A stretch of 64,000 bases of DNA, taken from NCBI RefSeq assembly GCF_020745735.1, contig NC_083402.1, positions 7,130,001 through 7,194,000 on the forward strand. Direction: 5' to 3'. Position 1 is the stretch's first letter; each line of letters starts with the position of its first letter. The notes beneath the pieces were generated by a model that worked only from the letters and a program-made list of their open reading frames with translations, ran no database searches and was not told where the DNA came from. The stretch is from Hemiscyllium ocellatum (lineage: Eukaryota). Both the position numbers and the translations under genes were made by a program. Positions 5,701 through 48,404 of the stretch are shown in pieces.

Positions 5701-6720
5701 CTCTGGAAGGTTAGATTGCATGGAATGTAAGGTGAGTTGGCAAATTGGATACAAAATTGGCTTGATGGTAGGAAGCAGAGGGTAATAGTGGAAGGATGTT
5801 TGTCAGATTGGAGGCCTATGACTAGTAGAGTGCCTCAGGAGTCGATGCTGGTGAAAAAGCTATTTGTTATCTATATCAATGATTTGGATGAGAATGTATA
5901 AGGTCTGATCAATAAGTTTGCTGATGACTCCAAGACAGGCGGTATCTTGGACAGTGAGGACAGTTATCAGAAAGTGCAGCAGGACCTTGATCAGCTGGGG
6001 ACATGGGCCGAGAAAGGCAAATGGAGTTTAATATAGATAAATGTGAGGTCTTGCATTTTGGAAAGTCAAATCAAGGCAGGAGTGTCACAGTGAATGGTAG
6101 GGCCTTAAGGAGTGAAGTGGAATGGAGGGATGTAGGAGTTCAGGTTCATAGTTCTCTAAAATTGGAGTCATAGGTAGACAGGGCAGTGAAGGCAGCTTTT
6201 GGAACACTGGACAAATACACGGATAGGGAAGGATTAGAAGGATATGGGCCAAGTGCAGGGAAATGGGGTTAGCGTGGATGGACATTTTGGTCACCATGGA
6301 TCAGTTTGGGCCTGAGGGCCTGTTTCCGTGCTGTAGAACTCTATGATTCCACAACAAAGGAAACATCTCAAAGACTCCAGAAAGATTTCCTTCAAGAAAT
6401 ATATGTCAATGAATGGGAAATTCTCATTCAAAAGAAACTGCCTTGGAGGAAACTCCTTTATGAAGGGACATGATTTGTTGGGAATAGCCATCAGCAGAAG
6501 AAGTATGGAAAAGGAACTGGAGAAATGAATGTCAATGGTATCAAGGCCATAGACCTCCTGAAAACACCTGTCAAATGTGTGGTTGGAGAAGTGGATCTTG
6601 GATTGGGTTCATCAGTGACGTAATGACTCACAGAACCAATAATCAGTGACATGGGATTTCCTTAGTAGATGACCTTACTCATTAGATGGTCATTGCTGAT
6701 GATCTTTCCAAGCTAGATTC
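2770..6720. repeat. Old paralogous segment, left copy (interrupted by a CR1 at 4660-6350)
   Basis: Collinear with ~60770-63600, e.g. gcagcagacagactg..ctcgagacagcaaggac and ctcattcaaaagaaactg..; includes a shared RTE 3' remnant. Confidence 0.8.
4660..6350 (+). mobile_element. Degraded CR1 LINE (RT region to 3' tail)
   Basis: KSPGPDQI.P, DFSKAFDKVPH and KFADD-like motifs; ORFs at 4691, 5128, 5406. Confidence 0.85.
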
Positions 6721-7119
6721 TAACAGCAAACATTTCCCATTTGTTCTCTCCTCTTTTGTGAAACAAGCTGCTGTTCAAAATTAAAATTCAATTCTCAACT
6801 TTAAATCAGTTCCATAACTGAGGAACAATTAGAAAAATCAAAGAAAAATAGCGATAGTGTCAACAGTAATCACATTGCTTTTCATTTGGTTACATTGATG
6901 GTAGGAAAGTTAGAAAGTTCATCAATCAGGGGAGACAACCCTTGCAGTCAATATATAACCTGAACAGTGAGAGTGGCAGTCTGTCACTACATGTCTATCT
7001 AAGATTCCCATTGTATTGATGCTTCACATTCTCTCTGTAACAATATCTGAAATAGACATTGATTGGTCAGTTAGAGTACAGCCAGTACCTGGACTAGACG
7101 ACTGTTAAGCCTGAGCAGT

Positions 7120-7150
7120 CTAAAGAACGCTGGACAAATCTGGATCATTC
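7120..7150 (-). CDS. Candidate terminal coding exon (R)NDPDLSSVL*
   Basis: Strong acceptor gctctttgtatgtttttcag|; phase 2 fits the preceding exon. May be an alternative rather than the main last exon. Confidence 0.4.
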
Positions 7151-16100: not shown

Positions 16101-19100
16101 TGTAACCATTCACCAGTTCAAACTTGAGTTTTGAAAATATGCACAGGTTAATTCAAACTTGTAGTCTGTATTAAATTTTGAGTAAAATACTTTGGGTGCA
16201 AGAGGAGTGATAGTTCAGCCATGTGGCTTTTCACGGTATAAGTTTAAAGATGAGCTGAGTGATGATCTGATTCCTCATTCCCTATTTCAAACAGGAAACT
16301 TCATTTTCAAATCAGTTCATCTTTTGTTCACAAGAGCAAGTATCCTCTCAGAATGTGCCCCGTCAAATCTCCTCAGCACCTTTTTTGTTTCAGTAATTTC
16401 TCCTCTAATATTTGTTATTCATTCATGGGTGTCTCTGGAAAGATTACATGCATTTATTGTCCATCTCGACTGCCAAGGAGCCGCTGCCTTCTTGAACTGC
16501 TGAGGTGAAGGGGTTACCCACAGGAGTTCTATGGATGGAGTTCCAGAATTTTGACTCAGCAACACTGAAGGAATGGCAATATGGTAAGAATGGAACCAAA
16601 CTACTCTGCATTGAGTGAGGCAGCAAAAACATTGAGAGCAGACATAGCCCTATCAATCCTGAAAAACCCTTCTCATTAACATCTTCCTCATTAACATCTG
16701 GAAGCTAGTGCAAGAAATGGAAGAGCTGTCTCATAGACTGGTCAACTAACAGTCCCACATAGGCAAACTCATGGAATCATAACTCAATTTGTCAGACACC
16801 ACTGTCATCGTTCCTGGATATATCCTGTCTCACTGGCAGGAACAGATCCAGCAGAGATTGAGGCACAGTGATATACATTTGGGAGGAGGTTGCCCTGGCA
16901 GTACCCAACATGAAGTTTCCAACTTAAAGTGAACATTGTTAGCCCATGGAACCACAATCTGTAACCTCATGATCCAGGTTAACTATCAATCCACCATTCC
17001 CATCAGGCTGGGAGATCAATAAAATGCATGTGTGAGTATGCTGTGAGCAACATAAGGTAAACTGAAAAATATGATGCCAACATTCTGAAACTACAGCACA
17101 CAATTGAGCCATTCCATAACCAATGGATCAGGTGGCTCTGCAGTCCTGGTTCATACAGTCCTGAATGATAGAGGACAATGGCTGCACCGGTTGGTTCAGA
17201 ACAGTTTTACAAGACTGGAGTCTCCCCAACAATGGGGAAAATTACCCGGGTATGTCCTGTGTACAAAAAGCAAAGTGATTCTGACCAGGCCATTTATTGC
17301 TCCATCAATCCACTCTCAATCATCAAGGAAGTGATGGAAAGTGTGAGTGACTGCCTTAACATCGAGCTACATTTGAGTAGGTGGAGCAAATGGGAGCTTG
17401 AGGAAAACTGAAGTCAACGGAAATTGGTGGTGGATCCTCTTTTGGTTTGAGTCATACCTGGGACATAGGAAGATGGTTGCAGTTTTTGGGGGTCAGCTCC
17501 AGGACACCACTGCAGGAGTTCCTCAGAGTAGTGTCCTTGGCCCAACCATCTCCTGCTGCGTCATTAATGACCTTCTCTTCACCATAAGGTCAGAAGTGGG
17601 GATGGATGCTCCCCTCCAAGACACTCACCATGCTGATTTGGGAATATTTCACCATTCCTTCAGTGTCACTGGGGCAAAGTCCTGAAAATCCTTTACCAAC
17701 CATATCATGAATGTCCCTGCTCCTGAGGGAATGCAGCAGTTCAAGAAGGCAGCTCACCATTCCCTTCTCCAGGGAAATTAGGGATGGCCAATACGGGCTG
17801 ACTGTGCATGTGGCACCAACATCCCCTCGAACAATTACAAGATAAATATAGTTCCAAGTCAGGATGATGTGCATCTGTTGCTGTTTTTCATGGTGGTTGT
17901 AGAGGTCACTAGTTTGGAAGGTGCTCGAGATGGAAATGTTGATGCTTAACTGCAGTGTATTTTGTAGTTATTTTCCTTCCCACAATGTTGCTTGGGTGGA
18001 AGTTCCAGGATTTTCAGCCAGCAACTGTGACAGAGCAGTGATATATTTTCAGATCAGGAAACCCACTCAAATATAAGGAATCCAAGTATGACCTTTGCAG
18101 AGCCATTAAGATAACCAAGGACCGATACCATCCAAACGAGAGATCCAGACAGACACCCAGTGACTATGGCAAGGATTGAATGACATCACAGGGTCTAAAA
18201 AGAGACAGTGCAAGATAGCAGACGATGATACATCCCTGCTGAAAATATGTTGCTGGAAAAGTGCAGCAGGTCAGGCAGCATCCAAAGAGCAGGACAATCG
18301 ACGTTTCGGGGCTTATGCCTAGATGACATATCCCTCCTAGATCGTTTCAACGCCTTCTCCGCTCACTTTGAGCAGAAATTTGGGAAAGGTAACACCTCTT
18401 CCGACAAGTCCTGATGAACCTATCCTAACAACCACTGCATCAGAGGTTAGATCAGTTTTCCTTCATGTGTGAATCCAAGAAAAGCAATGGGATCAGATGG
18501 AGTACCAGGTCGTGCACTCAGAGTGTGCACACATCAACTGGCAGAGGTCTTCTTGGACATCTTCAACCTCTCCCTGCAGCGGGCCACTTTCCCTGCCTGT
18601 TTCAAGAGGGCCAACATCATCTCTGTGCCTAAGAAGACTCATGCAGCATGTTTCAATGACTACTACCCAGTGGCCCTAACTTCGGTGGTCATGAAGTGCT
18701 TTGAAAGGCTGGTCATGGCATTAATCAACTCCAGCCTCCCTACTATTCTTGACACAGTCCAATTTGCCTATTGGACCAACAGATCCACAACAGATGCCAT
18801 ACTATTTGCTCTTCACTTCTCTATAGAACATCTTGACACCAAGAACAGCTACTTAAGAATCCTACTCATTGACTACAATTCAGCCTTCAATATTATTATC
18901 CCCTCGAGACTGATTACTAAACTTTGTGATCTCGGACTAAGCCCCACTCTCTGCAACTGGATCTTCAGTTTCCTGACCTACAGGCCACAATCAGTGAAGA
19001 TTGGGGACAATATTTCATTTTCACTAACACTCAACACTGGAGCCCCCCAGGTGTGCAGACTCAGCCCCCTACTGTACTTACTGTATAACCATGACTGCTT

Positions 19101-22100
19101 CGCCAAATGCCAGACTAATGTCATTTACAAGTTTGCTAATGACACCACCAAATCTCAGATGGTGACAAAACAGACTACAGATGGGAGGTGGAAGACCTGG
19201 AAAAATGGTGCACTGAGAACAATCTAGTCTCAATGCCAGCAAAACCAAGGAACTCATTATTGACTTTTGGTAGGATGTACTCATGCCCCCCTACACATTA
19301 ACAGCACAGAGGTGGAATGAGTGGAGGGTGTCAAGCTCCTGGGAGTGGTCATCCACAACAAGCTTTCTTGAACTCTTCATATGGATGCACTGGTTACAAA
19401 GGTCCAACAACATCTCTTCTTCCTCAGGCAGCTGAGGAAATTTGTCATGACAGCAAATACCCTTGCCAACTTTTATAAGTGTGCCATCGAGAGCATTCTG
19501 TCTGGATGTATCACTACCGGGTATGAGAACTGTACCATTCGAGATCGAAGACGGTTACAGAGACTAATGAATTCAGCCTGGACAAGCACAAAGGCCAACC
19601 TCCCATCTAGAGAATCCATCTACCAGGCCCGCTGTCAAGGAAAGGCCACCAACATTCTCAAAGATCCATCCACCCTGGCAATGCTTTTGGGGAGAAGGTA
19701 CAGAAGCCTGAACACACGCAGCAGACAGTTTCATAACAGTTTCTACCCTACTGTTGTTAGAATATGACTGGACTCACAAACTCTTAACATTTGCCTGTAC
19801 CTGTGTTTTTGTTTTAGCTGCTGTTTACCTATTATTTACTTATCTATGCTACTTTACTCTGTGATCTGCCCATATTGCTCACAAGAGAAAGCTTTTCACT
19901 GTGCTTTGGTACATGTGATAATAAATTCAATTCAATTCCTGCACTCTTCCAGACAAGTGGGGAGTATTTCAACACAGCCCTGATTGAAGAATAGGCATTT
20001 GTGTCAGAAGGTGTGTTAATTTAATGGATTCCTAGCTCACGATTTGCACTCCTGGTTTCATAAATGAGTAAGCCATTCAGAGGCAGTTGAGAGTGAATCA
20101 CATGATGGTGGGTATAGAGTCACATGTAGGTCAGACTAGGTAAGAACATGAGTGACCCAGATGGGTTTACATTAATGGTGATGGATACATGGTCATTACG
20201 AGATGACTTTTTAGTCCACAATTTTTTCAATTCAAATTTTACAATCCAGTTGGGATTGGAATCATTTGCAAGGACATTAACCACTGGAGAAGGCAGCTCC
20301 CCTAATGTTCTCCTCAGCCAATAGAGAGGGAGACAACCAATGTGAGCTGAAGGTTCCTTTATCCTGAGGCATGCTCATCCAATGAGGGCTCAGGAGGTAC
20401 AAGTTTCTCTTTACTTCAGTCAATGCTGAGGGAGAAGGGCTCTCACTGGTAGGAAATTAGGAGGTTGGATCTCGGTGATATTTCGTCTGTCCCCTATCCC
20501 AGAATGCTGAAGTTAGTTTAAACATAGTAAATGAATGATTGTGTGAGAGACTGGGAAGTTTCAGATGTAATGTTCTAAAAATTCCAGCCGATATCACTGC
20601 CTCCTGCCTCAGTCCAACTGAAAGAGCGCAAACCCAAGAGCTTCCAGGAGAAGTGGAGCTTGTCCCCATTGTGCTATAAGGGCAACAACACCATCCGAAC
20701 ATTGTTCCTCACCTATCACTTCCAGATCTGTCCCCAACAGCGTTTCGAAACTGCCAATATTGAATTCCACACAACACCGATAGAAGCCATCATCCTCCAG
20801 GCTCAGTCCCTCCATCATTAATGAGACATCGTTGTTGCTGAGGTTCCCCACAAATCTGAATCGATTCCCACCGTCCCGCTGTATCACATTCTCACACAGC
20901 TCACCCTGGGAATGGTCTGGACCAGGATACGTACAGTTAAAGATGACACCTGTGTCAGATTTAATCCATATGATGGAGCCAGTGAGTGGGAGATTAGTAT
21001 CAGGGTGGGTGAAGCTGCAGGGTAAGACAACGGTTCTTCCTTCCACAGCCCTCACTTCGTTCGCAACTGTCATTGACCAATCAATAGCAGAAACCTCTGT
21101 AGGGGGGAAAGAGAGGATATGAACACCAAAGAGTGAGGGCAAGTACTGAATCTGTTGTATAGTGCAAAAAGATATAACATCCTATATTCATGATTTATAC
21201 CCTGACCTGAGATAGTGTGGAATGAGCTACAACGTGCAGCACCACAGAGGATGTCAGGTGTTTTGTTAGCATCCTGAGGTGAGACTGTGAGTGTTTGTTG
21301 GTCTTGGTTGAAGAGAGCGTTTAGTGTCTGAGAGTTTTCTGAACACTCCATTGTTCCAGGAGATCCAGAGTTATCGCAAGACGAGGACTCTGGGCCCTCC
21401 CTGCAGAATCTTTTCTATTTCCCATCACTTTCTACTCTATTACAGAGCCAGCCTTCAGCAACCTGGCTCATTCATCAGTTGTAGGAGAGGGGTGGGGGAT
21501 GCAGTGAATGTACTGCAGAATGGAAATAGATGAAGAAATAAAGAAGAGCTGAAGTAAATTTGTCATAGTCCCAGAGAGCGACTGTCTCATTAGAGAGAGA
21601 TGACTAGTGATGATTTAACCTGGGTCCCTATGCTGCAGACAAGGGGCAAGGTTGAGAAGATGGGATCTTCATGGTCACCTCAGACAGTATGGGAATTAAA
21701 CCTGCATTGTTGGCGTCACTCCACATTGAGGAGAAAGTGAGGTCTGCAGATGCTGGAGATCAGAGCTGAAAATGTGTTGCTGGAAAAGCGCAGCAGGTCA
21801 GGCAGCATCCAAGGAATAGGAAATTCGAAGTTTCGGGTATAAGCCCTTTATCAGGATTCCTGATGAAGGGCTTATGCCCGAAACGTCAAATTTCCTGTTC
21901 CTTGGATGCTGCCTGACCTGCTGCGCTTTTCCAGCAACACATTTTCATCACTCCACATTGTGGAGCCAACTGTCCAGCCAACTGAGCTAACAGGCCTGAA
22001 AAGGCGAATCAAGTAGTTCTAGAAGGCAGCGTGAATATCATCAAGTGAGGGCCATAAGGGAGTGTGGCATGACTCGATGCAATTTACTTGTGAGTAAGGC

Positions 22101-25100
22101 AGATGAGCTGAGGGTGTAGATTGATGAATGGGGATGTGACATTGTTGTTATCACAGAGGCATGGTTGAGGGCAGGGCAAGATGGACCCAACAGTGTTCAG
22201 GCTTATAGAACCATCAGATGAGACATGTAAGGATAGTGGTGAATGTAAAAGAGGAGGGGGTGTTGCAACATTGATCAAGGAGTCTATTGCTGTAATAAAA
22301 TGGATGATATCTTATAATGTCCCTCAAATAATGCCATATGGTACAATGTAAAACAAATGACCCATCACCACACTCTATCTTATACCATCAGGGCAATTTT
22401 GTATTCAATTGGCATTCTCTCCCTGAATCCCATGTAATCTAACTTCACCAATTAGTCCACCATGTGGAACCTTGGCAATGGCTTTACTAAATACCATGTG
22501 AACAATAATTTTAATGTGTAAATCAGGGATTTGAGGAGACCATTCTTTCACTGAGAAGATGGTAGAAATTTGGAATGCACTGCCTAGGAGAGTTGTCGAG
22601 ATGGGAAATCGGACAACGTTTTAAAAAGTACTTGGATCAGCAGTTGAAAATTTATAACAAGTCATGGCCCGAATGCTGGAAACTAGGATACATGTAGATT
22701 GAGATTTTTTTTGGTGTACACTCAATTGGCTAAAGGGCCTCTCCTGTTCTGTTTGATTCTATGATTCTCTGACTGAGTGAAGATGAGAATCAAAAAGGGC
22801 AAGAAGATGCTGGTGGGAGTGGTCCAAAGGCTCCATAACACAAACTATATGGTGGGACAGGGAATAATTCAGAAGAGAGTAAGAGCATGTAAGAAAGGTA
22901 ATACATTAATCATGTACATAGGTATAATCAGATTAGCAAAGGAAGCCATAAGGAACAATTCATAGAACATATTCAAGGCAGTTTCTGAGAACAATATGTT
23001 GTGAATCCAACAAGGGATCAGGCTATTTCAGACCTGGTGATGTATCATGATTCAAGTTTAATCAATTATGCCAGAGTGAACAACACCCTGGAAACAGTGA
23101 ACATAATATGTTAGAATTTAGTGTTCAGTTTGAGAGGGAGAAACATGGATTGGAAGTAACTGTGTTTAGCTTATGGAAGGGTAATTACAAAGGGATGAGG
23201 GCAGAACTGGCTGGAGTGGATTGTAGAAGCAGTTTAGCAGCAAAGACAGATAAGGAAAAATGACAGACTTTTAAGGTAATAGATTATGGCTCACACCAAA
23301 GTTTGCAGTCCAGTGAGGAGAAGCATTCTCTGAAATGGATAAGTCAATCAGGTTTAACAAAGGAAGCTAAGTATATCATCAGGTTGAAAGATGAAACATA
23401 CAACATAAGAAATATTCATGATAAACAAGAGGATTGGGAAAGTTTTAACAACCAACAGCAGATGACTGAAAAATTTACTTGAATTATTTTGTGTTTTATT
23501 ACAAGTTAAAGAGATAGAACATAGAAAATAGAACATACAACATAGGACAATACAGCACAGTACAGGCCCTTCAGCCCTTGATGTTGTGCCAAATGTTTAT
23601 CCTATTCTAATTCAAAGTTACATGCCCTCCAGTTTACTATCATCCATGTTTCAGTGAATACTGAAGCAAAGTATTTATTAAGGGCCTCCCCTAACTCCTG
23701 CACCTCCAGCTACAATTTCCCTCCATTACCCCTCATTGGCCCTGTCCTCACTCTGGCCATCCTCTAGTTCCCCACAAAGGTGCTGAATTCCTTCAGGTTT
23801 TCATTAATCCTAACTGCTAAAGCTTTTTTTTATGTCCCCTTCTGGCTCTCCTAAGTCAATTCTTCAATTCCTTCCTGGCTACCTGGTAACCTTCTAGAGC
23901 CCTGTCTGATCCTTGCATCCTCAAACATAAATAAGCTTCCTTCTACCCCTTGATTAGATGTTCTACACCCCTATTCACCGAAACTTCCTTCAACCTACCA
24001 TCCCTTCCTTGCCTCAGTTAACAATCTTATCCAGCACTATGAGCAAATGCTCCCTAAACATCCTCCACATTTCTGTCATGCATTTTCCTGAGAACAGCTT
24101 GTTGTCAATTTAGGCACCTCAGTTCCTCCCAGTAGCATTGTAATTCCTCCTCCCCCAATTAAATACTTTCCCATACCATCTGCTTCTAACCCTCCCCATG
24201 ACTATAGTAAAAGTCATGGAGTTGTGATCACTATCACCAAAATGCTCTCAAACTGAGAGATCTGAGACCTCAACTGATTCGTTGCCAAGCACCAAATCCA
24301 ATATGGCCTCCCCTTTAGTCGGCTGATCTACATATTGAGTCACGATTCTTTCCAGGACATACCCTGACAAAAACTGCTCCATCCAAACTATTTGAACTAA
24401 GGAGGTTCCACTGAATATTGGGGAAGTTAAAGTCACCCATGACAACGAGCCTGTTATTTCTGCACCTTTCCAAATTCTGCCTCCCAATCTGCCCTTGCGT
24501 GTTTCTGTTGCTACTGGAGTGTCTGCAGAAAACTCTCAATAATGTGACTGCTCCTTTTCTGTTTCTGACTTCCATCCATACTGACTCTGTAGACAGATAA
24601 AGGGGAATCATTGGATGTTATATATTTGGATTTTCAGAAGATATTTCACAAGTACAACACATTAAACACCTTAATAAGATTGGATTCAATAGTGCTGGTG
24701 ATAATATATGAGGATGGACAGAGGATTTGCCAACTAATGGAAAGCAGAGATTTGGGACAATGGGGGTGGGGTGGAATTTCAGGCCGGCAACCTGTAATTA
24801 GTGGTGTCCCACAGGGATCTACACTGTGGCAACATTTATAATAGAATATAAAATAATACAGCACAGTACAGGCCCCGTGGTCCTTGATGTTGTGCCAGCC
24901 TTCTATCCTACTCTAATACCAGACTAACCTGCGTGTCTCTAATGTAGTTGACTCTACTACCACTTCTGGAAGTGTATTCCATGTGCCACCAGTCTCTGAG
25001 TAAAGAACCTACTTCTGACGGCTCCTCTGAACCTTCCTCCAATTACCTTGAAATCATACCCTAGATTAGGGTGTTGCTGGAGAAGCATAGCAGGTCAGGC

Positions 25101-28100
25101 AGCATCTGAGGAGCAAGAAAATTGACGTTTCAGGCAAAAGCCCTTCATCAGGAATAAAATCATTCCCCCTCATGAGAAAAGCCTAAGCTCCCTCAACCTT
25201 CCTTAATAAGACATACCATCTAGTCCAGGCAGTATCCTGGTGAATCTCCTCTGACCCTTTCTAAAGCTTCCACATCTTTCCAATAATGAGGCGACAGAAC
25301 TGGACATACTATTCCAAGTGTGGTCTAACCAGGGCTCTACAGAGCTGCACCATAACCTCAAGTCTCTTAAACTCAATCCTCCTGCTAATGAAAGCCAACA
25401 AACAATGATATCTTCTTAACAACCCTATCAACCTGGGTGGCAACTTTGAGGGATCTATGGACATGGACCCTAAGATCTCACTGTTCCTGCACACTGACAA
25501 GCATCCCGCCTTTATCTCTGTATTCTGCATTCAAATTTGACCTTCCAAAGTGAATCATTTCACACTTTTCCAGGTTGAACTCCATCTGTCACTTATCAGC
25601 CCAGTTCTGCATCCTGTCAATGTCTTGTTGAAAGCTACAACAGAGCTTCGTACTATTCATAACTCTACAACCTTCATGTCATCAGTAAACTTGCTAACCC
25701 ACCCTTCCACTTCCTCATCCAAGTCATTTATAAAAATCACAAAGTGCAGAGGGCCCAGAACCAATCCCTGTGGAACACCACTGATAACCAAGCTCCAGGC
25801 TGAATACTTTCCAACTTCCACCAACCTCTGTCTTTTATGGGACAGCCAATTCTGTATCCAGACAGACAGATTTTCCTGAATCCCATGCCTACTTACTTTC
25901 TGAATGAGCCTACCATGGGGAATCTTATCAAATACCTTGCTAAAATCCATGTGCACCATATCGACTGCTCTACCTTCATCAATGTGCTTTGTCACATCTT
26001 CAAATAATTTAATAAGGCTTATGAGGCATGACCTGCCCCTCAGAAAACCATGCTGGTTATCTTTAATCGAACATTGGTTATCCAATAATCATAAATCCTG
26101 TGCCTAAGATCCTCTCTGATAATTTGCCCACAACAAATGTAAGACTGACTGATTTGCATTTCCCAGGATTATTCCTATTTCCTTTCTTGAATAAGGGAAA
26201 AATATTTGCAACCGTCCAATCATCTGGTACTACTCTGGTGGATAGTGAGGAAACTAAGATCATCACCAAAGGCACAACAATTTCTTCCCTTGCTTCCTGT
26301 AGACACCTAGGATATATCCTGTCTGACCCGGGGAATGTATTTATCCTTATATATGTTAATGAGTTGAATGAAGTAAGTGAATGTACTGTAGCCACGTTTG
26401 CTGATGACAAAAAAATGTAAGTGAGAAAGCAAGTAATAAGGATGAAACAAAGAAGCTGCAGAGTGACATAGACAGGTTAAGTAAGTGCCAAAATCATGGC
26501 ACATAGAATACAATGGGAGAAGTGTGTAGTTATACATTTTGGTTGGAAGAATAGAAGAGCTAAATATTATTGAAATCAGCAAAGTCTGCAGAAAGTGACA
26601 GAACAGAGGGATTTTCGGGTTTCATGAATCACAAAATCATCCAAGCTCAGCAAGTAGCTGGGAAGGTAAACAGAATGGTGAGTTTTATTTCAATTGGAGT
26701 GGAATTTACATGTCAGGAAGATTTGCCAGGCACTATTTAATTTACAGCTGGAATATTGTGAATAGTTTTGGTCCCTTTTCAAAGGAATGTTAAACTGGCG
26801 TTTGAGGTAGACCAGAGAAGGTTCACGAATTTGATGCCAGGTATGGGCAGGTTTGGGGAGATTGGGCCTGTACTTATTGGAATACAGAAGAATGAGCGGT
26901 GACTTTATTGAACCATAAAGGATTCTTCGGATGCCTGACAAAGTGGATGCAGAACGGTTGCACATTTAAGAGGCGAGGTATGTTGACTCGAAGAAAGTAG
27001 TGAAGCTCTGGACTTCTTTGCTACTAGAACAGTTAATGTTGAGTCCCTAAGTACATTCAATACAGAGATAGACTGACTTCTTTTCTTTATGGGAATCAGA
27101 GGTTGTGAAGAAAAGTCAGGAAAGTGGGATTGAGGTTTATCATCTCAGTCATGATCTCAGTGAAGTGTAGAACAGACTTAGTGGGCTGAATGGCCTTCTA
27201 GAATGCTCCAGCTGCCTCAGTTCTCAACACCTCCATTTCTGAAGCCTGTGAATCCCATTTGCTTTTTCAGACACTCTCTCAATATGTCCTGATACCTTCA
27301 AAAACTGATACATGCAGAAGGCCTAATGCCTTTATCATGATACATCATTTAAAACTGTCTGAATGATTTTATATTGTCAACAGGCAGCATAGAGCCAATG
27401 GGGATCTTGGTGATGGCTTCTCTGTTTCTTATCGCAGCACACTGAAGCCAGTCTGAATATCAGAATTGAGTGTGTGAGAGGCTATGTTTATGCATGATAG
27501 ATTGGTCTATAAATCCCAGCCTCATTGCTTTCTCTCTCCCCCTCTCTGTCTCTCTCTCACTTTGTCTCTCTCCTTCTCACTGCCTCTTCTCAGACCAACT
27601 GAAAGAGCCCAGGACAAGGAGCAAACCCAAGACCTTCTGGACCAGTGGAGTCTCTCCCCACTGAGCTGTGAGGGCAGACATAGCATCCAAACAATGTTCC
27701 TCACCTTCAATCTCCAGCTTTGTTGGAGACTGCATTTGAAAACTGCCAATATTGAGCTCCACACGACACAGATAGGAACCAGCATCCTCCTGGTTTAGTC
27801 CTTCCATCATTATTGAGGCATCATTGTTGCTGAGGTTCCCCATGAATCTGAATCGATTCCCACCGTTCTGCTGTCTCACATTCTCACACAGCTCACCCTG
27901 GGAATAGTCTGGACCAGGATATGTACACTTATAGATAACACCTGTGTCAGATTTAATCCATATGATGGAGCCAGTGAGTGTGAGATTAGTGTCAGGGTGG
28001 GTGAATCTGCAGGGTAAGACAGCGGAGCCTCCTTCCTCGGCCCTCACTTCATCCGCGACTGTCATTGACCAACCATCATCAGAATCCTCTGTGAAGTGGG

Positions 28101-28102
28101 GA

Positions 28103-28133
<31 letters not shown>

Positions 28134-31100
28134 TGAGAGAGCGAGAGAGAAAGAGAGAGAGAGAGAGAGAGACATAAACAATATTAGCAGGACAAATATC
28201 AGTGTGTGGAACTGAAACTTTGAGATTCTGATCTGATTCTGTTATTTCATGGAAATAGGGATAACAGTTATAAAGAGAGGCAGTGACCTAATGGTAATGT
28301 CAATTCATGAGCAATCCAATACTGAGGTCAGAGTTTCAGTTTCTGACATGGCAGCTGCTGGAATTTCAATTCAGTTATTAAACAGTTATTAAACATCAGA
28401 AATTAAGCAGTAGTCTAATGGTAACCATAAAATTATTATCAATTGTTGGAAAAAATCTGTCTGGTTCACTGATGTTCTTCAGAGAAAGGAAATACCGTCC
28501 TTACCTGGTCTGGCCCGCATGTAACTCCAGTTCCGCAGCAATAGATTTGACTCTGAATTGCCCTTAGAAATGGCCACAGGAGACCCTCAGTTGGAACAAA
28601 CCAGGATTAAAAGCAAAATGACTGTCATGACTGAACAGAGTTAAAAATCATACAACACATTATAGTCCAAAAGGTTTGTTTGGAAGTACGAATAAACCTG
28701 TTTGACTATAACCTGAGTTTGTGTGATTCTTAACTTTATCCACCCCAGTCCAACACCGGCACCTCCACATCATGACTCAACAGGGAATACTGTGTCAATA
28801 GCCATGTCCTACTGTTCCACACTTCGGCAGGAACTGTACAAATGTACTAGAATCCCAACGAGATCACTGAAATCTGTATTGCCTGACAAACGACTACTTG
28901 GGACAGAAAGGAACCACACCAGCAGTCTTCAGTTCAAATAATTCCATCAATCAATTTATAGTAATATCTGCTCGTACCCCTCCCCACACGCACACAGAGA
29001 ATCAGTCACAATTATGACAGAGAAAAGATAAACAGTTTATATTTCTACCATAGTGAGAAAAAAGAATATAGACAGGGTAAACAAAGTTCTAAAAATCAAA
29101 TTCCCGAACACAAGATGGAAAGATCTTTCTATCTCACAGTCCCTGTTGTTTTTTGCAGTGATGAGATGCTGTTCTCTGTACAATGATGGTCTTCCTTCAA
29201 ACTAAATGTCTATTATGTGAACTTAGACCTTTGCTCATCATTCTCAGCAGTCTATCTGTCCATGATAGGACTGGGAGGATTGACCACTATACAGTCCTTC
29301 TGGAGACAGAGTCCCTTCTTTGAAGAACATTAAGGTACATCCCCATCACGTGTGTGGCACTAGCCCAGCATTAAATGGGACAGGCTTTGAATTGATCTAG
29401 AAACTCAGAACCAGGATCCCAGTGACACTGTAGGCCAGAAATATAGCTGAGTTGAATTGCAGCACAATTTGTAAACTCCAGGCCTGGGATGTTCCCTGAC
29501 TCAAGCATTATCATCAAGTCAGGTCATCAACCCTGGTTCAATGAACAATGGAGGCGTGGATGACAGGAACATTGCCAGCAAAACTGAAAATGAAATGTCA
29601 ACGAGAAAATACTTCCATGCCAGACAGCATAAACAGCAACTGATAACCTGGGTTAAGTGACCCCACTGTCAGTGGATCAAATATAAGCTCAGCAGACCTG
29701 CAATATGCAGTTGTGAATGGTTGAGGACAATTAATCAACTTAACAGGAGTATGAGTCTCCACAAATATCCCCATTCTCAGTGAGGGGGATCCTAGCTCAT
29801 TAGTGCAAATGAAGCATTCACACCTAACTTGAACCAGAGTGCTGAGTGATGATCCATCTCACTCTCCTCCAAAGATCCTCAGCATCACAGATAATTCCTT
29901 ACCAAGACGGTAAATCTGATTCTGTGGATCTGGAGACATGTGCTGCTAGGGTGTGGACAGAAATCATTGACCTGGAGCTATTCCTCACCCAGCCCCTGAC
30001 CCATACTTGAGGGCTACACTCATTGCCCATGCCCTAACACAGTGAACCTTGCTATTGAAGACTGATGTACTAGCTACTCCGGTCCTGTGCTCTACATGTG
30101 GGGCAGACCAAGTGAGGATGGCAGAAATAAAAACAGAAATTGCTGGAAAGACTCAGCAGGTCTGGCAGCATCTGTGTTTTGGGTCCAGTGACCCTTCTTC
30201 AGAAGAAAAATGACTCAAAATGGTAGACTGAATAGCTTGGATATTGCTGCTGCTCTGGAGATTCTGGCTTAATTGGAGATTTACTTGGAGATTTCTTACA
30301 GTTATCGCATTTCCATTGTACAAGATTTTAATTTTGATTCAGTTTTAGTTCTTTTATGATCAAAAATGCAAAGAAAAATAAAAGCAAAAGCAAAAAAAGC
30401 ACTCCTTTTTAATCAAACGGAGTTCTGCAATCATGGATGGTTTGGATTTTTTTATATCTATATAAAATTACATGCGTTAACATCGCTGAAGCGATTATTT
30501 TTTTAAATTGCAGAGGAGAGTTCTTTTTTAAGACAGTTGTGTTTATAGAGATTTTGAAGAGGCTAACACAAAGGATGACTCTGTTGTATGATTTTTTTCA
30601 TGAGAACATTGAAAGCTGCCTGCTAGAACAGCTGAGCAGGAGTCACTTTTGTATTTAATAAATTCGATTGTTCAACTCAGTGGTTGATTTTATGAAGACT
30701 TCTAGGTTTGATTTTTCTTAAGATGTATATGTTTATTTCTTTTTATTTTTTACTTTTGAGCATGCTCTGGCCATGACTCGTATTCACCACTGGGCTGGTC
30801 TTGGACGCTGTTCTTCATTCCTTCCAGTAAGGACAGTTTAAGAAGTTAAAAGTTGAGGGTAGTAAAGAAAAACATCAGCAAAAGGGAAAAAAAAGAAAAG
30901 GAAGAAAAAGGAAAAGGAGCTGGTGAGGAGATGAGCTGTAGCTGGAGCACCTTACTCTGCTGCCATCTTAACCAGTTGTATTAACTGAGCATCCTCCATG
31001 ACTGGTTGGATTGAAGGGTCTGTTTCCATGCGGTATGACTCAATGACTCTCTATGACTCAATGACTGATTGTAGCTGGGAAAAAGGTTGGTATAAATGAT

Positions 31101-34100
31101 GAAAATGGGGTGGAGGAAGGGTAGAGGAATAAACATTCGTTGGAGAAGGCGGTCAGATAGGGATAAACACACAGAGAGATGGATAGATGGACTTGGACAG
31201 ACAACTTAAAGGGTAAAGTTCAGCCTGGAAGAATGAACAGCTGTTCATGAGCACCATTAGTAACTGAGAATGGATTGTTTCTGGTAGCAGTCCATGTGAT
31301 GACAAGGCCTTGGTGTGTGATGGTTGAGTGAAGAGATAGGAGAAGTTGGTTAGGCCCTAAAATTATTGAACTGCATATTGGGTGCAGGAAACTGCAGAGT
31401 CCCCAAGTGAAAAATTAGATGCTTTTCTTCCAGCTTGCACTAAGCTTCACTGGAGCACAGTAATAAGCCTGAGACAGAGGGGGTTGCCAGGGAACATGGT
31501 GGTGTTGAAGGGGCAAGCCATAGAAAGCTCAGGGTCATTTTTGTGTACAGATTATAGGTGTTTTGGAAAGTGGTCATCCAGTCTACATTTTGTCTTCCCA
31601 ATGTAGAGAGGTAGAAGTGAACTGTGCAGGGTTGATGGGTGGTGAGCAGCTATGAGGTGGTGCTGATGGATAGAGAGAGGGGTCAGGATAGTGCCATGCA
31701 TTGCCATTTGCATAGAGGGTCATTTTTGTGTACAGAATATAGGTGTTTTGGAATGTGGTCATCCAGTCTGTGTTTAGTCTTCCCAGTGTAGAGGTAGAAG
31801 TGAACTTTGCAGTGTTGGTGGAATATGAGCAGCCGTGAGGCTATATGAGGTGGTACAGATGGGGAGAGAAGGATCAAGATGGTGCCATGCATTGCCATAT
31901 GCATAGAGTGTGAATGAAAAGTGTGGTACTGGAAAAGCGCAGCAGGCCAGGCAGCATCCGAGGAGCAGGAGAATCGACGTTTTGGGTATAAGCCCTTCTT
32001 CAAGAATGAGGCTGGTGTGCCAAGCGGGTCTCCTCGGATGCTGCCTGGCCTGCTGCGCTTTTCCAGCACCACACTTTTCAACTCTGGTCTCCAGCATCTG
32101 CAGTCCTCACTTTCTCATAGAGTGTGATTGGCAGATTTCATTCTCTGAGTCAAGTCACCATATTCTTAGCAGACTGTGAGGATGCTCTCTTATGAAAGAG
32201 AGATTTAACCTGAGGGCCACCACACCTCAGGTGAGGGAAGAGTTGAGATGGAGAGTGCTTCATGGTAACTTGAGCCAGTGTGGGGATTGATGCACATGGT
32301 AGGCTCCACATTGTTTCTCAAACCAACTGTCCAGCCAACTGAGCTAAACAGATTCCCAGATTCCCTAAAAAACATGACTGAATCAAATGGGCTTTTTTAT
32401 ATATCAGCAATGTGGCCAATAGATTGGTTTTTTATTTGAGTTCCAGATATTTAAACATTACATTCAAATTTCACAAACTTCTGCTGTGGTGGGATTTGAA
32501 CCCATGGCCCCAGACTTCAGTATCTGGATTAGTTTCCCAGTGACAGTGCAGTATACCAACATTTCTCTTCATAACCCATGTGTGAATAAGGGCTGGGATA
32601 GGTCCCACTTGGCTGTCATGCCTCATACATTAAAATGAATTGTAGGAACGTACTTGCACTGATGGAACTATTCCTATTGAAGGCGTGAACACTTCCATTG
32701 TGACCAAGAGGGACACATTAGACTGTTTCAACTTCTTGTTTGATGAGATGAACTCAAAGTCTACACGACTTTGCGTCATTTGGAGATTGAACTGAACATT
32801 CTGAGTGTGTCAATGTCTTTCAATACTGACATCAGAATGTACCTCAAAGAATCAGCACATCAAATTAAGTTAAATATATAAAAAGTCAAATCTCAAATAC
32901 AAAAGTGAAATACTGCAGATGCTGGAAATTTGAAACAAAAATCAAAATGCTGCAAATAATCAGTTGGTCAAACAACACCTGTAGAGAGAAACATGGTTAA
33001 TGTTTTAGTTCAATGATGTTTCACCTGAAAATGAAATCCTAAAAAGTTCACAGAATGTGTTCCATTCTCTCCGTACAACATCTACAGACAGAAGAATGTG
33101 TGGATGGCCTCTTACCAGTTATGACCTGCACCCGACTCTCTTTCTGGATCAGACACTGAATATCCAGTGGTAGTGATGTGTATTCCACCAGACACAGGTA
33201 AGTGTGATTGTCCCTCACACTCAGCTGGTTTATCCTGGTCGAGGCGTTTCCCTCCTCTGGGTTCCCGATGAGCTCATATCGATTTCCACTGTGTACAGTT
33301 GTCCAAGTTCCCTGTGATTGGGCTGTAAATGTAATGATGTGTTGGTAGGGCTTCTTCCTCATCCAGGTAACAGTGGTCAGGTTAAGGAACTCCATGGTCT
33401 CAAAGATACAGGGTAAAGTAACTGAATCTCCCTCTTCCCCACTCACCACTGGGACATTTCCTTGAGCAGCTGAGGAAAGGACAAGCATTAGAATGGATGT
33501 GGTCAGAAGCTCGAGATTCAATTTGTTACATTTCTTTTAAACTTCACAATAAAATGAACAAGTAAACACTCCACCCATACTGCTCACAGATCTGTTCTAG
33601 ATATTCCCCTGAAGTCACCATGATCAAAACCTCTCCCTATCTCTCAATTTTAGAACCTGAATCACAAGATGCTTACAACCCTCCCGAATTCATTCATGCA
33701 GAACCCTCTGCCCAAAGTTTATATTCTTAGACTTAGACTTAGACTTAGACTTACAGTGTGGAAACAGGCCCTTCGGCCCAACAAGTCCACACCGACCCGC
33801 CGAAGCGCAACCCACCCATACCCCTACATTTACCCCTTACCTATCACTACGGGCAATTTAGCTTGGCCAATTCACCTGACCCGCACATCTTTGGACTGTG
33901 GGAGGAAACCGGAGCACCCGGAGGAAACCCACGCAGACACGGGGAGAACGTGCAAACTCCACACAGTCAGTCGCCTGAGTCGGGAATTGAACCCAGGTCG
34001 ACAGGCGCTGTGAGGCAGCAGTGCTAACCACTGTGCCACCGTGCCGCCATTCTCTACATAATGTCAAGGATTTTACAACCTTCCCCCTCACTCTGTCCAG

Positions 34101-37100
34101 CAAACATATTCAAAATATTGATCACACACTGTATGAAGGAGAACCCCCTGGTATCATTCCTAATGTAACCATTCACCAGTTCAAACTTGAGTTTTGAAAA
34201 TATGCACAGGTTAATTCAAACTTGTAGTCTGTATTAAATTTTGAGTAAAATACTTTGGGTGCAAGAGGAGTGATAGTTCAGCCATGTGGCTTTTCACGGT
34301 ATAAGTTTAAAGATGAGCTGAGTGATGATCTGATTCCTCATTCCCTATTTCAAACAGGAAACTTCATTTTCAAATCAGTTCATCTTTTGTTCACAAGAGC
34401 AAATATCCTCTCAGAATCTGCCCCGTCAAATCTCTTCAGAATTTTCTTTGTTTCAGTAATTTCTCTTCTAATATTTTTTATTCATTCATGGGTGTCTCTG
34501 GAAAATATTACATGCATTTATTGTCCATCTCGACTGCCAAGGAGCCGCTGCCTTCTTGAACTGCTGAGGTGAAGGGGTTACCTACAGGAGTTCTATGGAT
34601 GGAGTTCCAGGATTTTGACTCAGCAACACTGAAGGAATGGCAATATGGTAAGAATGGAACCAGACGACTTTGTTTTGAGTGAGGCAGCAAAAACAATGAG
34701 AGCAGACACAGCCCTGTTAATCCTGTAAAATCTTTCTCATTAACATCTGGAAGCTAGTGCAAGAAGTAGAAAAGCTGTCTCACAGACTGGTCAACTAACA
34801 GCGTCACATAGGCAAATGCATGGAATGATATCTCACAATGTCTCAGGTACCAGCGTTGCCATTGCTGGATATGCCCTGTCCCACTGGCAGGGACAGACCC
34901 AGCAGAGATCGAGGCGCTGTGATATACAGTGGGAAGAGGTTGCCCTGGTAGTACCTAACATGAAGTCCCCAACTTAAAGTGAACATTGTTAGCCCATGGA
35001 ACTACAATCTGTAACTTCACGATTCAGGTTAACTACCAATCCACCATTCCCATCAGGCTGGGAGATCAATGAAATGTATGTGTGAATATGCTGTGAGCAA
35101 CAATAGGCAAACTGAAAAATATGATGCCAACATTCTGAAACTACAACATCCAGGATAGCACATAATAGAGCCATCCCATAACCAATGGATCAGATGGCTC
35201 TGCAGTACTGGTTCATACAGTCCTGAATGATAGAGGACAATTGCTGCACCAGTTGGTTCAGTAGAGTTTTATAACACTACGATCTCCCCAACAATGGGGA
35301 AAATTGCCCAGGTATGTCTTGTATACAAAAAGCAAAGTGATTCTGACCAGGCAATTTACAGCTCCATCAATTCACTCTCGATCATCAGGGGAGTGATGGA
35401 ATGTGAGTGACTGCCCTTAACATCAAGGCTACATTTGAATAGGTGGAGCAAATGGGAGCTTGAGGAAAACTGAAGCCAATGGGAATTGGGGGAGAATTCT
35501 CTTTTGGTCTAAGTTTATACCTGGCACATAGGAAGATTGTTGCAGTTGTTGGAGGTCAGCTCCAGGACACCGCTGCAGGAGTTCCTCAGGGTAGTGTCCT
35601 AGGCCCAACCATCTCCTGCTGTATCATCAGTCCTCCCTCCACCATACGATCAGAAGTGGAGATGGATGTTTCCTGATGAACATGGGATACAGGAGAACAT
35701 CACTATATACAAGCTTCCCTCCAAGACACTCACCATCCTGATTTGGAAATATTTCACCATTCCTTCAGTTTTTTTGGGGCAAAGTCCTGGAATTCATTTA
35801 CCAATTACATCATGACTATCCCTGCAGCTGAGGGAATTCAGAAGTTCAAGAAGGCAGCTCACCATTCCCTTCTCCAGGGCAATTAGGGGTGGCCAATAAA
35901 CACTGACTGTGCAAGTAACACCCACATCCCCTTGAACAATTCCAAGATAAATAGTGCCAAGTCAGGATGATGTGCATCTGCTGCTGTTTTTCATGGTGTT
36001 CGTAGAGATCACTAGTTTGGGGGGTGCTCGAGATGGAAGAGTTGGCGCTTAACTGCAGTGTATTTTGTAGTTATTTTTCTTCCCACAATGGTGTTTGGGT
36101 GGAAGTTCCAGGATTTTCAGCCAGCATCCGTGACAGGACAGCGATATATATTCCTGTACTCTTCCAGAAACAATGGGAGTATTCCACCACGCTTCTGACT
36201 GATCAATAGGCTTTAATGTCAGAAGATGTGTTAATTTACAGGATTCCTAGCTTGCGACCTGCTCTTGGAGCCACAATTTCATTTGCACTCATGGGTTCAC
36301 TCCTTGTCCACAAATGAATGAGCCATTCAGAGGTAGTTAAGAATGAATCACATGACTATGGGTACAGAGATGTGTGTATGTCAGACAAGGTAAGGATAGC
36401 AGATTTTCCTCCCTAAAGGACATGAGTGACCCAGATGGTTTTACTTTTACAGTGATGGATCCATAGTCATTATGAGACGACTTTTTAGTCTGAGATTTTT
36501 TTCAATTCAAATTTTACAATCCAGCTGGGATTGGAATCATTCACAAGGACATTAACCTCTGGAGAAGGCAGCTTCCCTAATTTTCTCCTCAGCTCATAGA
36601 GAGGGAAATAGCAACTGTGAGGTTCTCAGCCAATGTGAGCTGAAGGTTCCTTCACTCTGAGGCATGCTCATCCAATGAGGGCTCAGGAGGTACGAGTTTC
36701 TCTGTACTCCACCCAATAAGGGGGCAGGGCTTTCACTGGTCGGAATCTAGGAGCTTGGATCTTGAGGATATTTAGTCTGTTCCCTATCCCAGAATGCTGA
36801 AGTTAGTTGAAACATAATGAATGATTGTGTGAGAGACTGTGGGAAGTTTCAGATGGAATATTCTACAAACTCCAGTTAATATCACTGCCTCCTGCCTCAG
36901 TCCAACTGAAAGAGCCCAGGACAAGGAGCAAAACCAAGAGCTCCCAGAAGAGGTGAAGCCTGTCCCCATTGTGCTATACGGGCAACAACACCATCCGAAC
37001 ATTGTTCCTCACCTATCACTTCCAGATCTGTCCCCAACAGCGTTTCGAAACTGCCAATATTGAGTTCCACACAACACCGATAGAAACCATCATTCTCCCG

Positions 37101-47634: not shown

Positions 47635-48290
47635 TTACGTTGTCAACGGAACGAGGACATGCCGCAACCCAAAGGACTAGCCACACTACCATACATCAAG
47701 AGCATTTCCGAACTGACAGCCAGACTACTGCGACCATTAGGACTCATAACAGCACACAAACCAACAGCCACTCTCAGACAACAAATCACCAGAATGAAGG
47801 ACCCGATACCCAGCATGAGCAAAACCAATGTAGTGTACAAAATCCCATGCAAGGACTGCACAAAACACTACATAGGACAAACAGGAAGACAACTAACGAT
47901 CTGCATCCATGAACACCAACTAGCCACGAAACGACACGACCAGCTATCCTTAGTAGCCACACGCGCAGATGACAAGCAACATGAATTTGACTGGGACAAC
48001 ACTACTATTATAGGACAAGTCAAACAGAGATCAGCCAGGGAATTCCTAGAGGCATGGCATTCATCCACAGATTCAATCAATAAGCACATCGACCTGGACC
48101 CAATATTCCGACCACTGCAACGGACAGCTGGAACTGACAGCCGGAAACAGCAGATTCAAACCACTACAAATGCTGGCGGAAAGATCACAGAAGCGCTTCA
48201 CAGGAGGCTCCCAAGCACTGAGGATGTCACCTAGACACGGGATGAAACATCTGCAACACAAATTCCCAGCTTGGCGAACAGAACCACAAC
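47635..48290 (+). mobile_element. Penelope-like element 3' part encoding a GIY-YIG endonuclease
   Basis: ORF 47572-48234: LPYI..NVVYKIPCKDCTKHYIGQTGRQL..IHEH. Confidence 0.92.
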
Positions 48291-48404
48291 AGTGCCAAAG
48301 AGTGTGCAACACTTTAGCAAGGGTGAAAATACAAGGAATGAAGAACAGGCAAGCAATGCTCTCTAAACTTTCCTCATCAAGCACTCCCATGGCAGGGAGA
48401 CCAC

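What the first reader, a model, noticed from the sequence alone, without database searches (positions are those of the whole stretch)
20771..37073. Sialic-acid-binding Arg kept only in the middle domain; Arg>Cys (CGT>TGT) in A1 and A3
Seen: A2 has C-R-V (CGT, 27763-27765); A1 (37071-37073) and A3 (20771-20773) have C-C-V (TGT), one CpG transition away; the B domains have Leu there. Known: this F-strand Arg (R143 in human Siglec-15) is required for sialic acid binding, and an Arg>Cys change disables binding in human SIGLEC12. Inference: convergent inactivation, leaving the only glycan-competent site in an internal domain, while the N-terminal domain may bind something else.
Basis: partly seen in the sequence, partly recalled or inferred. 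Interest (0 to 1): 0.78.

Follow-up and report, generated by a model that had tools for sequence, protein, structure and literature searches.

The report
Shark Siglec-15-like receptor, arginine lost twice
An epaulette-shark immune-receptor gene strings together five antibody-like domains, three of them related to the sugar-binding domain of Siglec-15; only the middle one keeps the arginine needed to grip sialic acid, and the two cysteine-bearing domains are copies of one old mutation, not two separate losses.

Summary
On the minus strand, A2 reads Y-L-C-R-V (CGT, 27763-27765). A1 (37071-37073) and A3 (20771-20773) read Y-R-C-C-V (TGT). The two B exons read Y-L-C-L-V; there is no third B.

The A domains are Siglec-15-like V-sets. 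Human Siglec-15 (7ZOZ) is the best hit by sequence and by fold, and the A2 Arg aligns with R143.

The window fits one gene: a single leader, A1-B1-A2-A3-B3, a single TM exon and a short tail, giving an open 699-aa frame. RefSeq splits it into two partial models, but their junctions join all five Ig exons.

"Convergent inactivation" of A1 and A3 is not supported. They lie in a duplicated A+B block and form one clade. Chiloscyllium punctatum has the same A(Cys)-B-A(Arg)-A(Cys) order with the same codons. This points to one CGT>TGT change that predates the duplication and the genus split.

Arginine loss recurs in this elasmobranch family (at least 9-12 times in 95 A domains), once more to Cys in a catshark. 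Function is untested.

It is a new variant of a known theme (Siglec-XII R122C). The scan already noted a sister multi-V gene 882 kb away.

The parts
46857..46917 (-). Leader (signal-peptide) exon, MKSLYVYLSGVLVSVSVQGR plus 1 nt, donor A|gtaagt, phase 1. It is the only leader of this family found in the window.
   Evidence: tblastn with leaders of seven homologues hits only here. Sequence and donor checked.
37013..37396 (-). A1 exon, a Siglec-15-like V-set of 384 nt, phase 1-1. The F strand reads Y-R-C-C-V, with the Cys codon TGT at 37071-37073 in place of the canonical Arg. The domain has 5 Cys.
   Evidence: (Pfam V-set E 2e-10)
33116..33469 (-). B1 exon, a second type of V-set domain of 354 nt, phase 1-1. 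It reads Y-L-C-L-V (Leu CTG at 33189-33191) and has a third Cys in 'DIQC'.
   Evidence: (V-set E 1.3e-13)
27705..28088 (-). A2 exon, a Siglec-15-like V-set of 384 nt, phase 1-1. It reads Y-L-C-R-V, with the canonical Arg codon CGT at 27763-27765. The domain has 4 Cys.
   Evidence: V-set E 4.9e-14; 7ZOZ E 5.2e-13, R aligned to R143
20713..21096 (-). A3 exon, a Siglec-15-like V-set of 384 nt, phase 1-1. It reads Y-R-C-C-V, with the Cys codon TGT at 20771-20773. It is 90% identical to A1 in protein.
   Evidence: 100% match to XP_060698451; AF2 pLDDT 87, top fold match 7ZOZ
15358..15711 (-). B3 exon, a V-set domain 91% identical to B1. It reads Y-L-C-L-V (CTG at 15431-15433).
11902..12009 (-). Stalk and transmembrane exon, VKKTEPTTVYPLAMPLLIILLIIINVIICITFRKTG. 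The membrane span has no charged residue. It is the only TM exon of this kind in the window.
8285..8324 (-). Cytoplasmic exon (GFSRQIELTTFSR).
7120..7150 (-). Last coding exon (RNDPDLSSVL, then stop). The tail is cut short relative to paralogues and has no ITIM.
32912..38573 (.). Copy 1 of the duplicated block (upstream flank, A1, intron, B1).
   Evidence: Self-blastn gives 80-89% nt identity to 15154-22504.
15154..22504 (.). Copy 2 of the duplicated block (upstream flank, A3, intron, B3).

Best explanation
The window (Hemiscyllium ocellatum, minus strand) most likely holds one gene of an elasmobranch-expanded family of Siglec-15-like receptors. The predicted product is a 699-aa type I membrane protein: leader, A1, B1, A2, A3, B3, an uncharged TM segment and a short tail without an ITIM. 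The A domains are homologues of the Siglec-15 sialic-acid-binding V-set. They keep the W44 equivalent, both disulfides and an aromatic residue at about the Y154 position. The carboxylate-binding Arg (human R143) survives only in A2. In A1 and A3 it is Cys. This Cys came from a single CGT>TGT CpG transition in an ancestral A domain. The A+B block carrying it was then duplicated, and both copies and the A2 Arg have been kept in Hemiscyllium and Chiloscyllium. By inference, A2 is the only domain able to make the canonical salt bridge with sialic acid. A1 and A3 would be lectin-dead spacer or other-ligand domains that expose an unpaired Cys where the Arg used to be. Shown: the sequence facts, the homology, the history and the exon chain as annotated. 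Inferred: the full-length transcript and all binding properties.
For: Codons and motifs.
Homology: Siglec-15 7ZOZ is the best PDB hit by sequence for A2 (E 5.2e-13) and for B1. It is also the best by fold for an AF2 model of A3 (pLDDT 87, TM 0.77), followed by sialoadhesin and Siglec-7.
Role of R143 and pocket residues: PMC10264397 and PMC7226832.
One gene: there is a single leader exon and a single TM exon. All Ig exons are 384 or 354 nt, phase 1-1, with GT-AG sites, and give an open 2100-nt CDS. RefSeq XP_060703194 joins A1>B1>A2, and XP_060698451 joins A2>A3>B3>TM>tail. The C. punctatum model chiPu_0013958 joins A(Cys)>B>A2.
Single origin of the Cys: the duplicated block, and a clade of A1, A3 and Cp_A3 with support 99. 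C. punctatum has the same exon order with TGT/CGT/TGT. Orthologue dS is 0.05-0.09, against 0.175 between A1 and A3.
Selection on Arg in the family: R is kept in 74 of 95 A domains, encoded by CGT, a codon that holds a CpG, in all four Arg-bearing exons read as DNA.
All exons are open, and omega is below 1 (0.26-0.63).
Against: RefSeq does not give the 699-aa model. It splits the locus into two partial proteins that both start at internal Met. The upstream model uses a cryptic 139-nt intron inside A2 (28047-27909) that destroys A2's frame. The leader-to-A1 join is inferred only. No member of this shark family has been tested for glycan binding, and the zebrafish Siglec-15 orthologue bound tested glycans poorly (PMC7226832). 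The Y87 contact of human Siglec-15 falls in a loop that is deleted in the shark domains. A1 and A3 carry another Arg two residues earlier on the same face of the strand. Omega values rest on 4-13 substitutions per class.
Confidence: 0.6

Rival explanations
1. None of the A domains is a lectin. The family descends from a Siglec-15-like V-set but recognises proteins or other ligands, so the Arg/Cys difference says nothing about glycan competence.
For: The architecture differs from Siglec-15: there are five V-set-type domains, no C2-set domain and no TM lysine. Y87 lies in a loop deleted in the shark domains. Arg has been replaced many times in the family. The column is only 77% conserved, well below the core positions. 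The zebrafish Siglec-15 orthologue bound tested glycans poorly.
Against: Arg is still kept in 74 of 95 A domains across sharks and rays, although its codon, CGT in all four Arg exons read as DNA, holds a CpG. W44 and the G-strand aromatic are kept. The nearest folds are all sialic-acid-binding V-sets.
Confidence: 0.2
2. The locus is not one five-domain protein. The exons are used in alternative transcripts or belong to separate genes, for example A1-B1 secreted or truncated and A2-A3-B3-TM separate. A2 would then be N-terminal or absent in the real products.
For: RefSeq gives two separate partial proteins that meet inside A2. Both start at internal Met, and one has a frame-shifting cryptic intron in A2. 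All exons are phase 1-1, so any exon can be skipped in frame.
Against: Only one leader and one TM exon exist between 7 and 47 kb. The annotated junctions B1>A2 and A2>A3 use the normal sites. C. punctatum has the same exon order and a model joining A-B-A2. Sister genes have complete RefSeq A-B-A-B-TM models.
Confidence: 0.15
3. A1 and A3 still bind sialic acid or another anion. They would use the Arg two residues earlier (Y-R-C-C-V), which points to the same face of the F strand, or a non-canonical pocket as in Siglec-6.
For: R at -2 is present in A1, A3 and both C. punctatum orthologues. Siglec-6 binds glycolipids independently of its canonical Arg (PMC10122656). The rest of the pocket is intact.
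Against: R at -2 is the commonest state in the family and co-occurs with the canonical Arg (Y-R-C-R-V; 45 of 122 motif hits). It therefore predates the loss and is not a compensating gain. In every tested Siglec, loss of the canonical Arg abolishes canonical binding.
Confidence: 0.1
4. The Cys was selected for its thiol. An unpaired, exposed Cys on the ligand face would make a disulfide to a partner chain, to the odd third Cys of the adjoining B domain, or to a ligand.
For: A1 and A3 have 5 Cys and B1 and B3 have 3, which makes 20 in the ectodomain, an even number. The Cys has been kept in four exon copies in two genera.
Against: The C. punctatum orthologue of B1 has Tyr instead of the third Cys. 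The B-type third Cys also occurs next to His-bearing A domains. TGT is simply one of the two CpG-transition products of CGT, and His (CAT) is the other common replacement. Distances could not be measured in the model.
Confidence: 0.1

Closest known systems
Human Siglec-15 (PDB 7ZOZ; R143)
   Same: It is the best sequence and fold match of the A domains. Shared features are the W44 equivalent, the B-F disulfide (C64-C142), the extra C95-C104 disulfide, 'RF-F-GN' and the 'Y-x-C-R-V-E' F strand.
   Different: Siglec-15 has one V-set plus one C2-set domain, a TM lysine for DAP12/DAP10, and its Arg in the N-terminal domain. The shark gene has five V-set-type domains, no TM charge and a short tail, and keeps Arg only in the third domain. 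The C-C' loop that carries Y87 is shorter.
Human Siglec-XII (SIGLEC12), R122C
   Same: The essential F-strand Arg is replaced by Cys, which abolishes sialic-acid binding while the protein is still made. It is the only mammalian Siglec with two V-set domains.
   Different: It is a CD33-related Siglec with C2-set domains and ITIM signalling. The human change is fixed in one species and the gene is being lost. In the sharks the Cys is shared by two genera, and a neighbouring domain keeps Arg.
Elasmobranch Siglec-15-like A/B receptor family (RefSeq 'uncharacterized', 'Siglec-15', 'pIgR-like', 'JAML-like' models)
   Same: Family members share the leader, the A and B domain types and the stalk/TM exon. 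Most are A-B-TM with ITIM-like tails (76 of 186 domain-bearing hits). Several are A-B-A-B. The scan's finding s1-213612 describes a sister gene 882 kb away.
   Different: This gene has A-B-A-A-B, with no B between A2 and A3, Cys in two A domains and a tail cut short by a stop codon.
Recurrent loss of the essential Arg in CD33-related Siglecs of primates (Roman-numeral Siglecs, great-ape Siglec-5)
   Same: The same residue is lost again and again in a fast-evolving, tandemly duplicated immune-receptor family. In the shark family it was lost at least 9-12 times, mostly to the CpG-transition products His and Cys.
   Different: It occurs in a different Siglec lineage and a different vertebrate class, and here the loss sits inside a multi-V protein that keeps one intact site.

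Membership tests
Siglec-15 (orthologue or family member) | V-set domain most similar to the Siglec-15 V-set in sequence and in fold | tested here: met
   7ZOZ_A is the top PDB hit for A2 (E 5.2e-13) and B1 (E 6.2e-9). It is also the top Foldseek hit of the A3 model (E 2.7e-10, TM 0.77, 37% identity).
Siglec-15 (orthologue or family member) | Essential Arg on strand F, directly after the F-strand Cys (R143) | tested here: inconclusive
   The feature is met in A2 (CGT). It is not met in A1 and A3 (TGT) or in B1 and B3 (CTG)..
Siglec-15 (orthologue or family member) | Two intradomain disulfides (C64-C142 and C95-C104) | tested here: met
   All four Cys align in A1-A3 (alignment). The disulfides are defined in PMC10264397. 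The four Cys columns are 92-99% conserved in the family.
Siglec-15 (orthologue or family member) | Architecture of one V-set plus one C2-set domain | tested here: not met
   All five Ig exons hit Pfam V-set above the cut-off. No C2-type exon was found.
Siglec-15 (orthologue or family member) | Lysine in the transmembrane segment for DAP12/DAP10 pairing, conserved from fish to mammals | tested here: not met
   The TM segment PLAMPLLIILLIIINVIICITF has no charged residue. The feature is described in PMC7226832.
Siglec-15 (orthologue or family member) | Sialic-acid binding | not testable with these tools
   This needs recombinant domains and glycan assays.
Siglecs in general | The membrane-distal (N-terminal) V-set carries the sialic-acid site | tested here: not met
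   The predicted N-terminal domain A1 has Cys. The Arg is in the third domain. This depends on the inferred leader-to-A1 join.
Elasmobranch Siglec-15-like A/B receptor family | Family leader (M-x-S-L-Y...SVSV-x-G), A-type then B-type V-set exons, and an 'EPTTV' stalk/TM exon | tested here: met
   tblastn of homologues against the window. The window encodes XP_060698451 and XP_060703194. The tree places A1-A3 inside the orectolobiform clade.

The most novel reading that the evidence does not exclude
The conserved Cys-Arg-Cys order is a design, not decay. This would be a Siglec-like receptor whose only lectin site is deliberately internal. It would be flanked, and in Hemiscyllium capped, by V-sets whose former sugar pocket now exposes a reactive Cys. 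That Cys could serve disulfide-mediated oligomerisation or covalent capture of a second ligand. If so, it would be the first Siglec-type receptor with a non-terminal lectin domain.
Probability: 0.12. Interest if true: 0.65.

Novelty: new variant of a known kind. Interest (0 to 1): 0.42.

Why it matters
Loss of the essential arginine is the classic way in which Siglecs are retired or repurposed, but it has been studied almost only in primates. Cartilaginous fish turn out to have a large, undescribed family of Siglec-15-like receptors in which the same residue is lost repeatedly, mostly through CpG transitions. In one conserved gene, the lectin-competent domain lies in the middle of a five-domain chain. 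The gene offers natural Arg, Cys and His variants of one domain in a single locus, which suits a test of what a Siglec V-set does after it stops binding sialic acid. It also corrects the public annotation, which splits the gene into two truncated proteins.

Tried and rejected

My first signal-peptide scan used a hydrophobicity threshold and missed the real leader. tblastn with homologue leaders found it.

I tried to rebuild the 177-aa upstream gene call by brute force. This gave 78 possible exon chains and no answer. The matter was solved when the protein itself (P0083) turned up among the hits.

A search for a lost B exon between A2 and A3, and for extra TM or leader exons between the Ig exons, found nothing. 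C. punctatum also lacks a B exon there.

I considered that Arg at -2 compensates for the lost Arg. I rejected it as a gain, because Y-R-C-R-V is the common family state.

I considered an A-Cys to B-Cys interdomain disulfide. This is weakened because the C. punctatum orthologue of B1 has Tyr, and the model gives no coordinates to measure.

Comparing omega between Cys-bearing and Arg-bearing domains gave too few substitutions to be significant.

Searches for papers on shark Siglec-15-like genes found none.
Full report
**1. The observation**

The gene lies on the minus strand. Translating the three named places gives the following.
- A1: ...NDGFYRCCVELNIGSF..., second TGT at 37071-37073.
- A2: ...DAGSYLCRVELNIGSF..., CGT at 27763-27765.
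- A3: ...DDGFYRCCVEFNIGSF..., TGT at 20771-20773.

TGT is one C>T change at a CpG away from CGT. The B exons read YLCLVEY, with CTG at 33189-33191 and 15431-15433.

One correction is needed. The window holds five Ig exons, not six: A1, B1, A2, A3 and B3. No B exon lies between A2 and A3.

**2. What the domains are**

All five exons hit Pfam V-set above the cut-off. Human Siglec-15 (7ZOZ) is the best solved relative for both domain types.
- A2 matches it at E 5.2e-13.
- B1 matches it at E 6.2e-9.

The alignment has no gap around the F strand. 'YLCRVEL' lies on 'YFCRVEF', so the A2 Arg is the equivalent of R143, directly after Cys142.

An AlphaFold2 model of A3 was built on 72 family sequences. 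It reached pLDDT 87.1 and pTM 0.81, and the Cys-Cys pair lies in strand 103-111. Its nearest solved fold is again 7ZOZ (TM 0.77, 37% identity), followed by sialoadhesin, Siglec-7, Siglec-10 and Siglec-8.

The structure paper (PMC10264397) defines these features:
- R143 as the salt-bridge partner of the sialic-acid carboxylate;
- W44 and Y154 as CH-pi contacts;
- the disulfides C64-C142 and C95-C104.

The shark A domains keep the W, all four Cys and an aromatic residue ('NIGSF') at about the Y154 place. Y87 falls in a loop that is shorter in the shark.

R143A abolishes binding. Human Siglec-XII has R122C and cannot bind sialic acid.

**3. Gene structure**

Homologues were retrieved from 1.8 billion representative proteins and from the 90% clusters. 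They show an elasmobranch family whose usual plan is leader, A, B, TM and an ITIM-like tail. Some members are A-B-A-B.

Searching the window with these proteins finds one leader exon (46917-46857) and one stalk/TM exon (12009-11902). It also finds two small tail exons.

All Ig exons are 384 or 354 nt, phase 1-1, with good GT-AG sites. Leader-A1-B1-A2-A3-B3-TM-tail gives an open 2100-nt frame of 699 aa.

The window is Hemiscyllium ocellatum. It encodes two RefSeq proteins.
- XP_060698451 starts at an internal Met of A2, then runs A3-B3-TM-tail.
[quoted passage not shown] It starts at an internal Met of A1, then runs B1 and A2 through the normal acceptor. It then uses a cryptic 139-nt intron inside A2 that shifts the frame.

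Taken together, the annotated junctions join all five Ig exons in order. No public model gives the full protein, and the leader-to-A1 join is my inference.

**4. History of the Cys**

A1+B1 and A3+B3 lie in a duplicated block: 32912-38573 against 15154-22504, at 80-89% nt identity including the introns. A1 and A3 are 90% identical in protein. A2 is 75-78% identical to either.

The orthologous region of Chiloscyllium punctatum was fetched through its proteins (loci L001 and L003). It has the same order: A(Cys), B, A2(Arg), A(Cys). The codons are TGT, CGT, TGT, and the C-terminal motifs are the same. A GenBank model, chiPu_0013958, joins A(Cys)-B-A2.

Orthologous exon pairs differ by dS 0.05-0.09. 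A1 against A3 gives dS 0.175.

In a tree of 95 A domains, A1, A3 and the C. punctatum Cys domain (Cp_A3, the only Cys copy included) form one clade (SH-aLRT 99). That clade is nested among Arg-bearing domains whose closest members read Y-R-C-R-V.

The Cys therefore arose once. It predates the block duplication, which in turn predates the split of the two genera. 'Convergent inactivation' of A1 and A3 is not supported.

**5. The family-wide pattern**

Among the 95 A domains, 74 have Arg. The others have His (8), Cys (4), Gly (3), Gln (2), and Tyr, Ser, Lys and Asn once each.

The tree needs 12 changes away from Arg, at least 9 of them on well-supported branches. One is an independent Cys in a two-domain receptor of Scyliorhinus canicula, XP_038661842/3.

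In C. punctatum, an A(His)-B-A2(Arg) block precedes the orthologue of A1. Its codon is CAT, the other CpG-transition product of CGT. Stegostoma has a leader-A(His)-B-A2(Arg)-B gene. An Arg-less distal A domain with an Arg-bearing internal A2 thus recurs in three orectolobiform genera.

Arg is still kept in 78% of domains, encoded by CGT, a codon that holds a CpG, in all four Arg-bearing exons read as DNA. This argues that the Arg matters in the family. The spectrum of replacements shows mutation bias.

Omega between orthologues is 0.63 for A1, 0.48 for A3, 0.26 for A2 and 0.29 for B1. This hints at looser constraint on the Cys domains, but it rests on very few changes.

**6. How it most likely works**

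Shown:
- the A domains are Siglec-type V-sets;
- only A2 has the residue that every tested Siglec needs for sialic acid;
- the arrangement is conserved and the exons are intact.

Inferred:
- the protein is a five-domain membrane receptor;
- its single canonical sugar site sits in the third domain;
- A1 and A3 cannot make the salt bridge, and act as spacers or bind something else;
- their odd fifth Cys is exposed on the former binding face.

The TM segment has no lysine and the tail has no tyrosine motif. Signalling through DAP12 or through ITIMs is therefore not expected from this chain alone.

Rivals are these: the family is not a lectin family at all; the exons are used in separate or alternative transcripts; a second Arg at -2 rescues binding; or the Cys was selected for disulfide formation. 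Evidence for and against each is given in the fields above.

**7. Comparison with what is known, and novelty**

The A domain works like a Siglec-15 V-set and is related to one. The gene is not a Siglec-15 orthologue by architecture: it has five V-set-type domains, no C2-set domain and no TM lysine.

The Arg-to-Cys change parallels human Siglec-XII. The recurrent loss parallels primate CD33-related Siglecs.

I found no paper on this shark family. An earlier finding of this scan, s1-213612, describes a sister multi-V gene 882 kb away in the same genome.

The result is a new variant of a known theme. It is moderately interesting, and its functional claim is still untested.

Noticed in passing
window 27705-28088 and 37118-7120 (minus strand): RefSeq splits this locus into two truncated proteins, XP_060703194 and XP_060698451, which abut inside the A2 exon. 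The first uses a cryptic donor (GAA|GTGAGG after 28048) and acceptor (exon restart at 27908). This removes 139 nt of A2 and shifts the frame to a stop at 27876. The same cryptic donor sequence is present in A1 and A3.
   Followed up: partly
window 7036-7152 (minus strand): The last coding exon ends at a stop after RNDPDLSSVL. The following 100 nt still resemble the longer tail of paralogues (61% identity to XP_060690388) but contain a second in-frame stop. The cytoplasmic tail therefore looks recently truncated.
   Followed up: partly
window 37396-42535 versus L001 1-4651 and 26590-31557: The flank upstream of A1 is 93-94.5% identical to the flank upstream of the first, His-bearing A exon of C. 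punctatum. From A1 onward the window matches the C. punctatum block that starts 22 kb further on (93.9%). Hemiscyllium therefore lacks, or Chiloscyllium gained, an A(His)-B-A2(Arg) block. The breakpoint lies just upstream of the A exon, which suggests unequal recombination between repeated exon flanks.
   Followed up: partly
window 54402-54431 (minus strand): NVIYAAVVNT matches the C-terminal ITIM-like motif of family members. It is most likely the tail of the upstream neighbouring gene, as noted in finding s1-195868.
   Followed up: no
window 9531-9747, 21728-21948, 31909-32116: Three copies of a repeat of about 200 bp, each matching the others in both orientations (palindromic). One copy sits just upstream of A3. 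This is the same element as finding s1-195838.
   Followed up: no
window 33116-33469 and 15358-15711: B1 and B3 carry a third, unpaired Cys ('DIQCLIQKE') near the G strand. It is present in the same B type of Stegostoma and in other Chiloscyllium and Hemiscyllium copies. In the C. punctatum orthologue of B1 it is Tyr.
   Followed up: partly
window 18451-19224 (+), 13081-14087 (+), 5400-5730 (+): Long open frames with reverse-transcriptase-like sequence (LINE fragments) fill the introns. Inverted repeats at 14661-15155, 39412-40147 and 47921-48294 flank the duplicated block.
   Followed up: no
protein P0001 (1128 aa, source not looked up): This Siglec-15-like protein has seven tandem A-type V-sets, all with Y-F-C-R-V-Q, followed by one further Ig-like domain and a TM segment. 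Chains of many A-type V-sets therefore also occur in a more distantly related protein.
   Followed up: no
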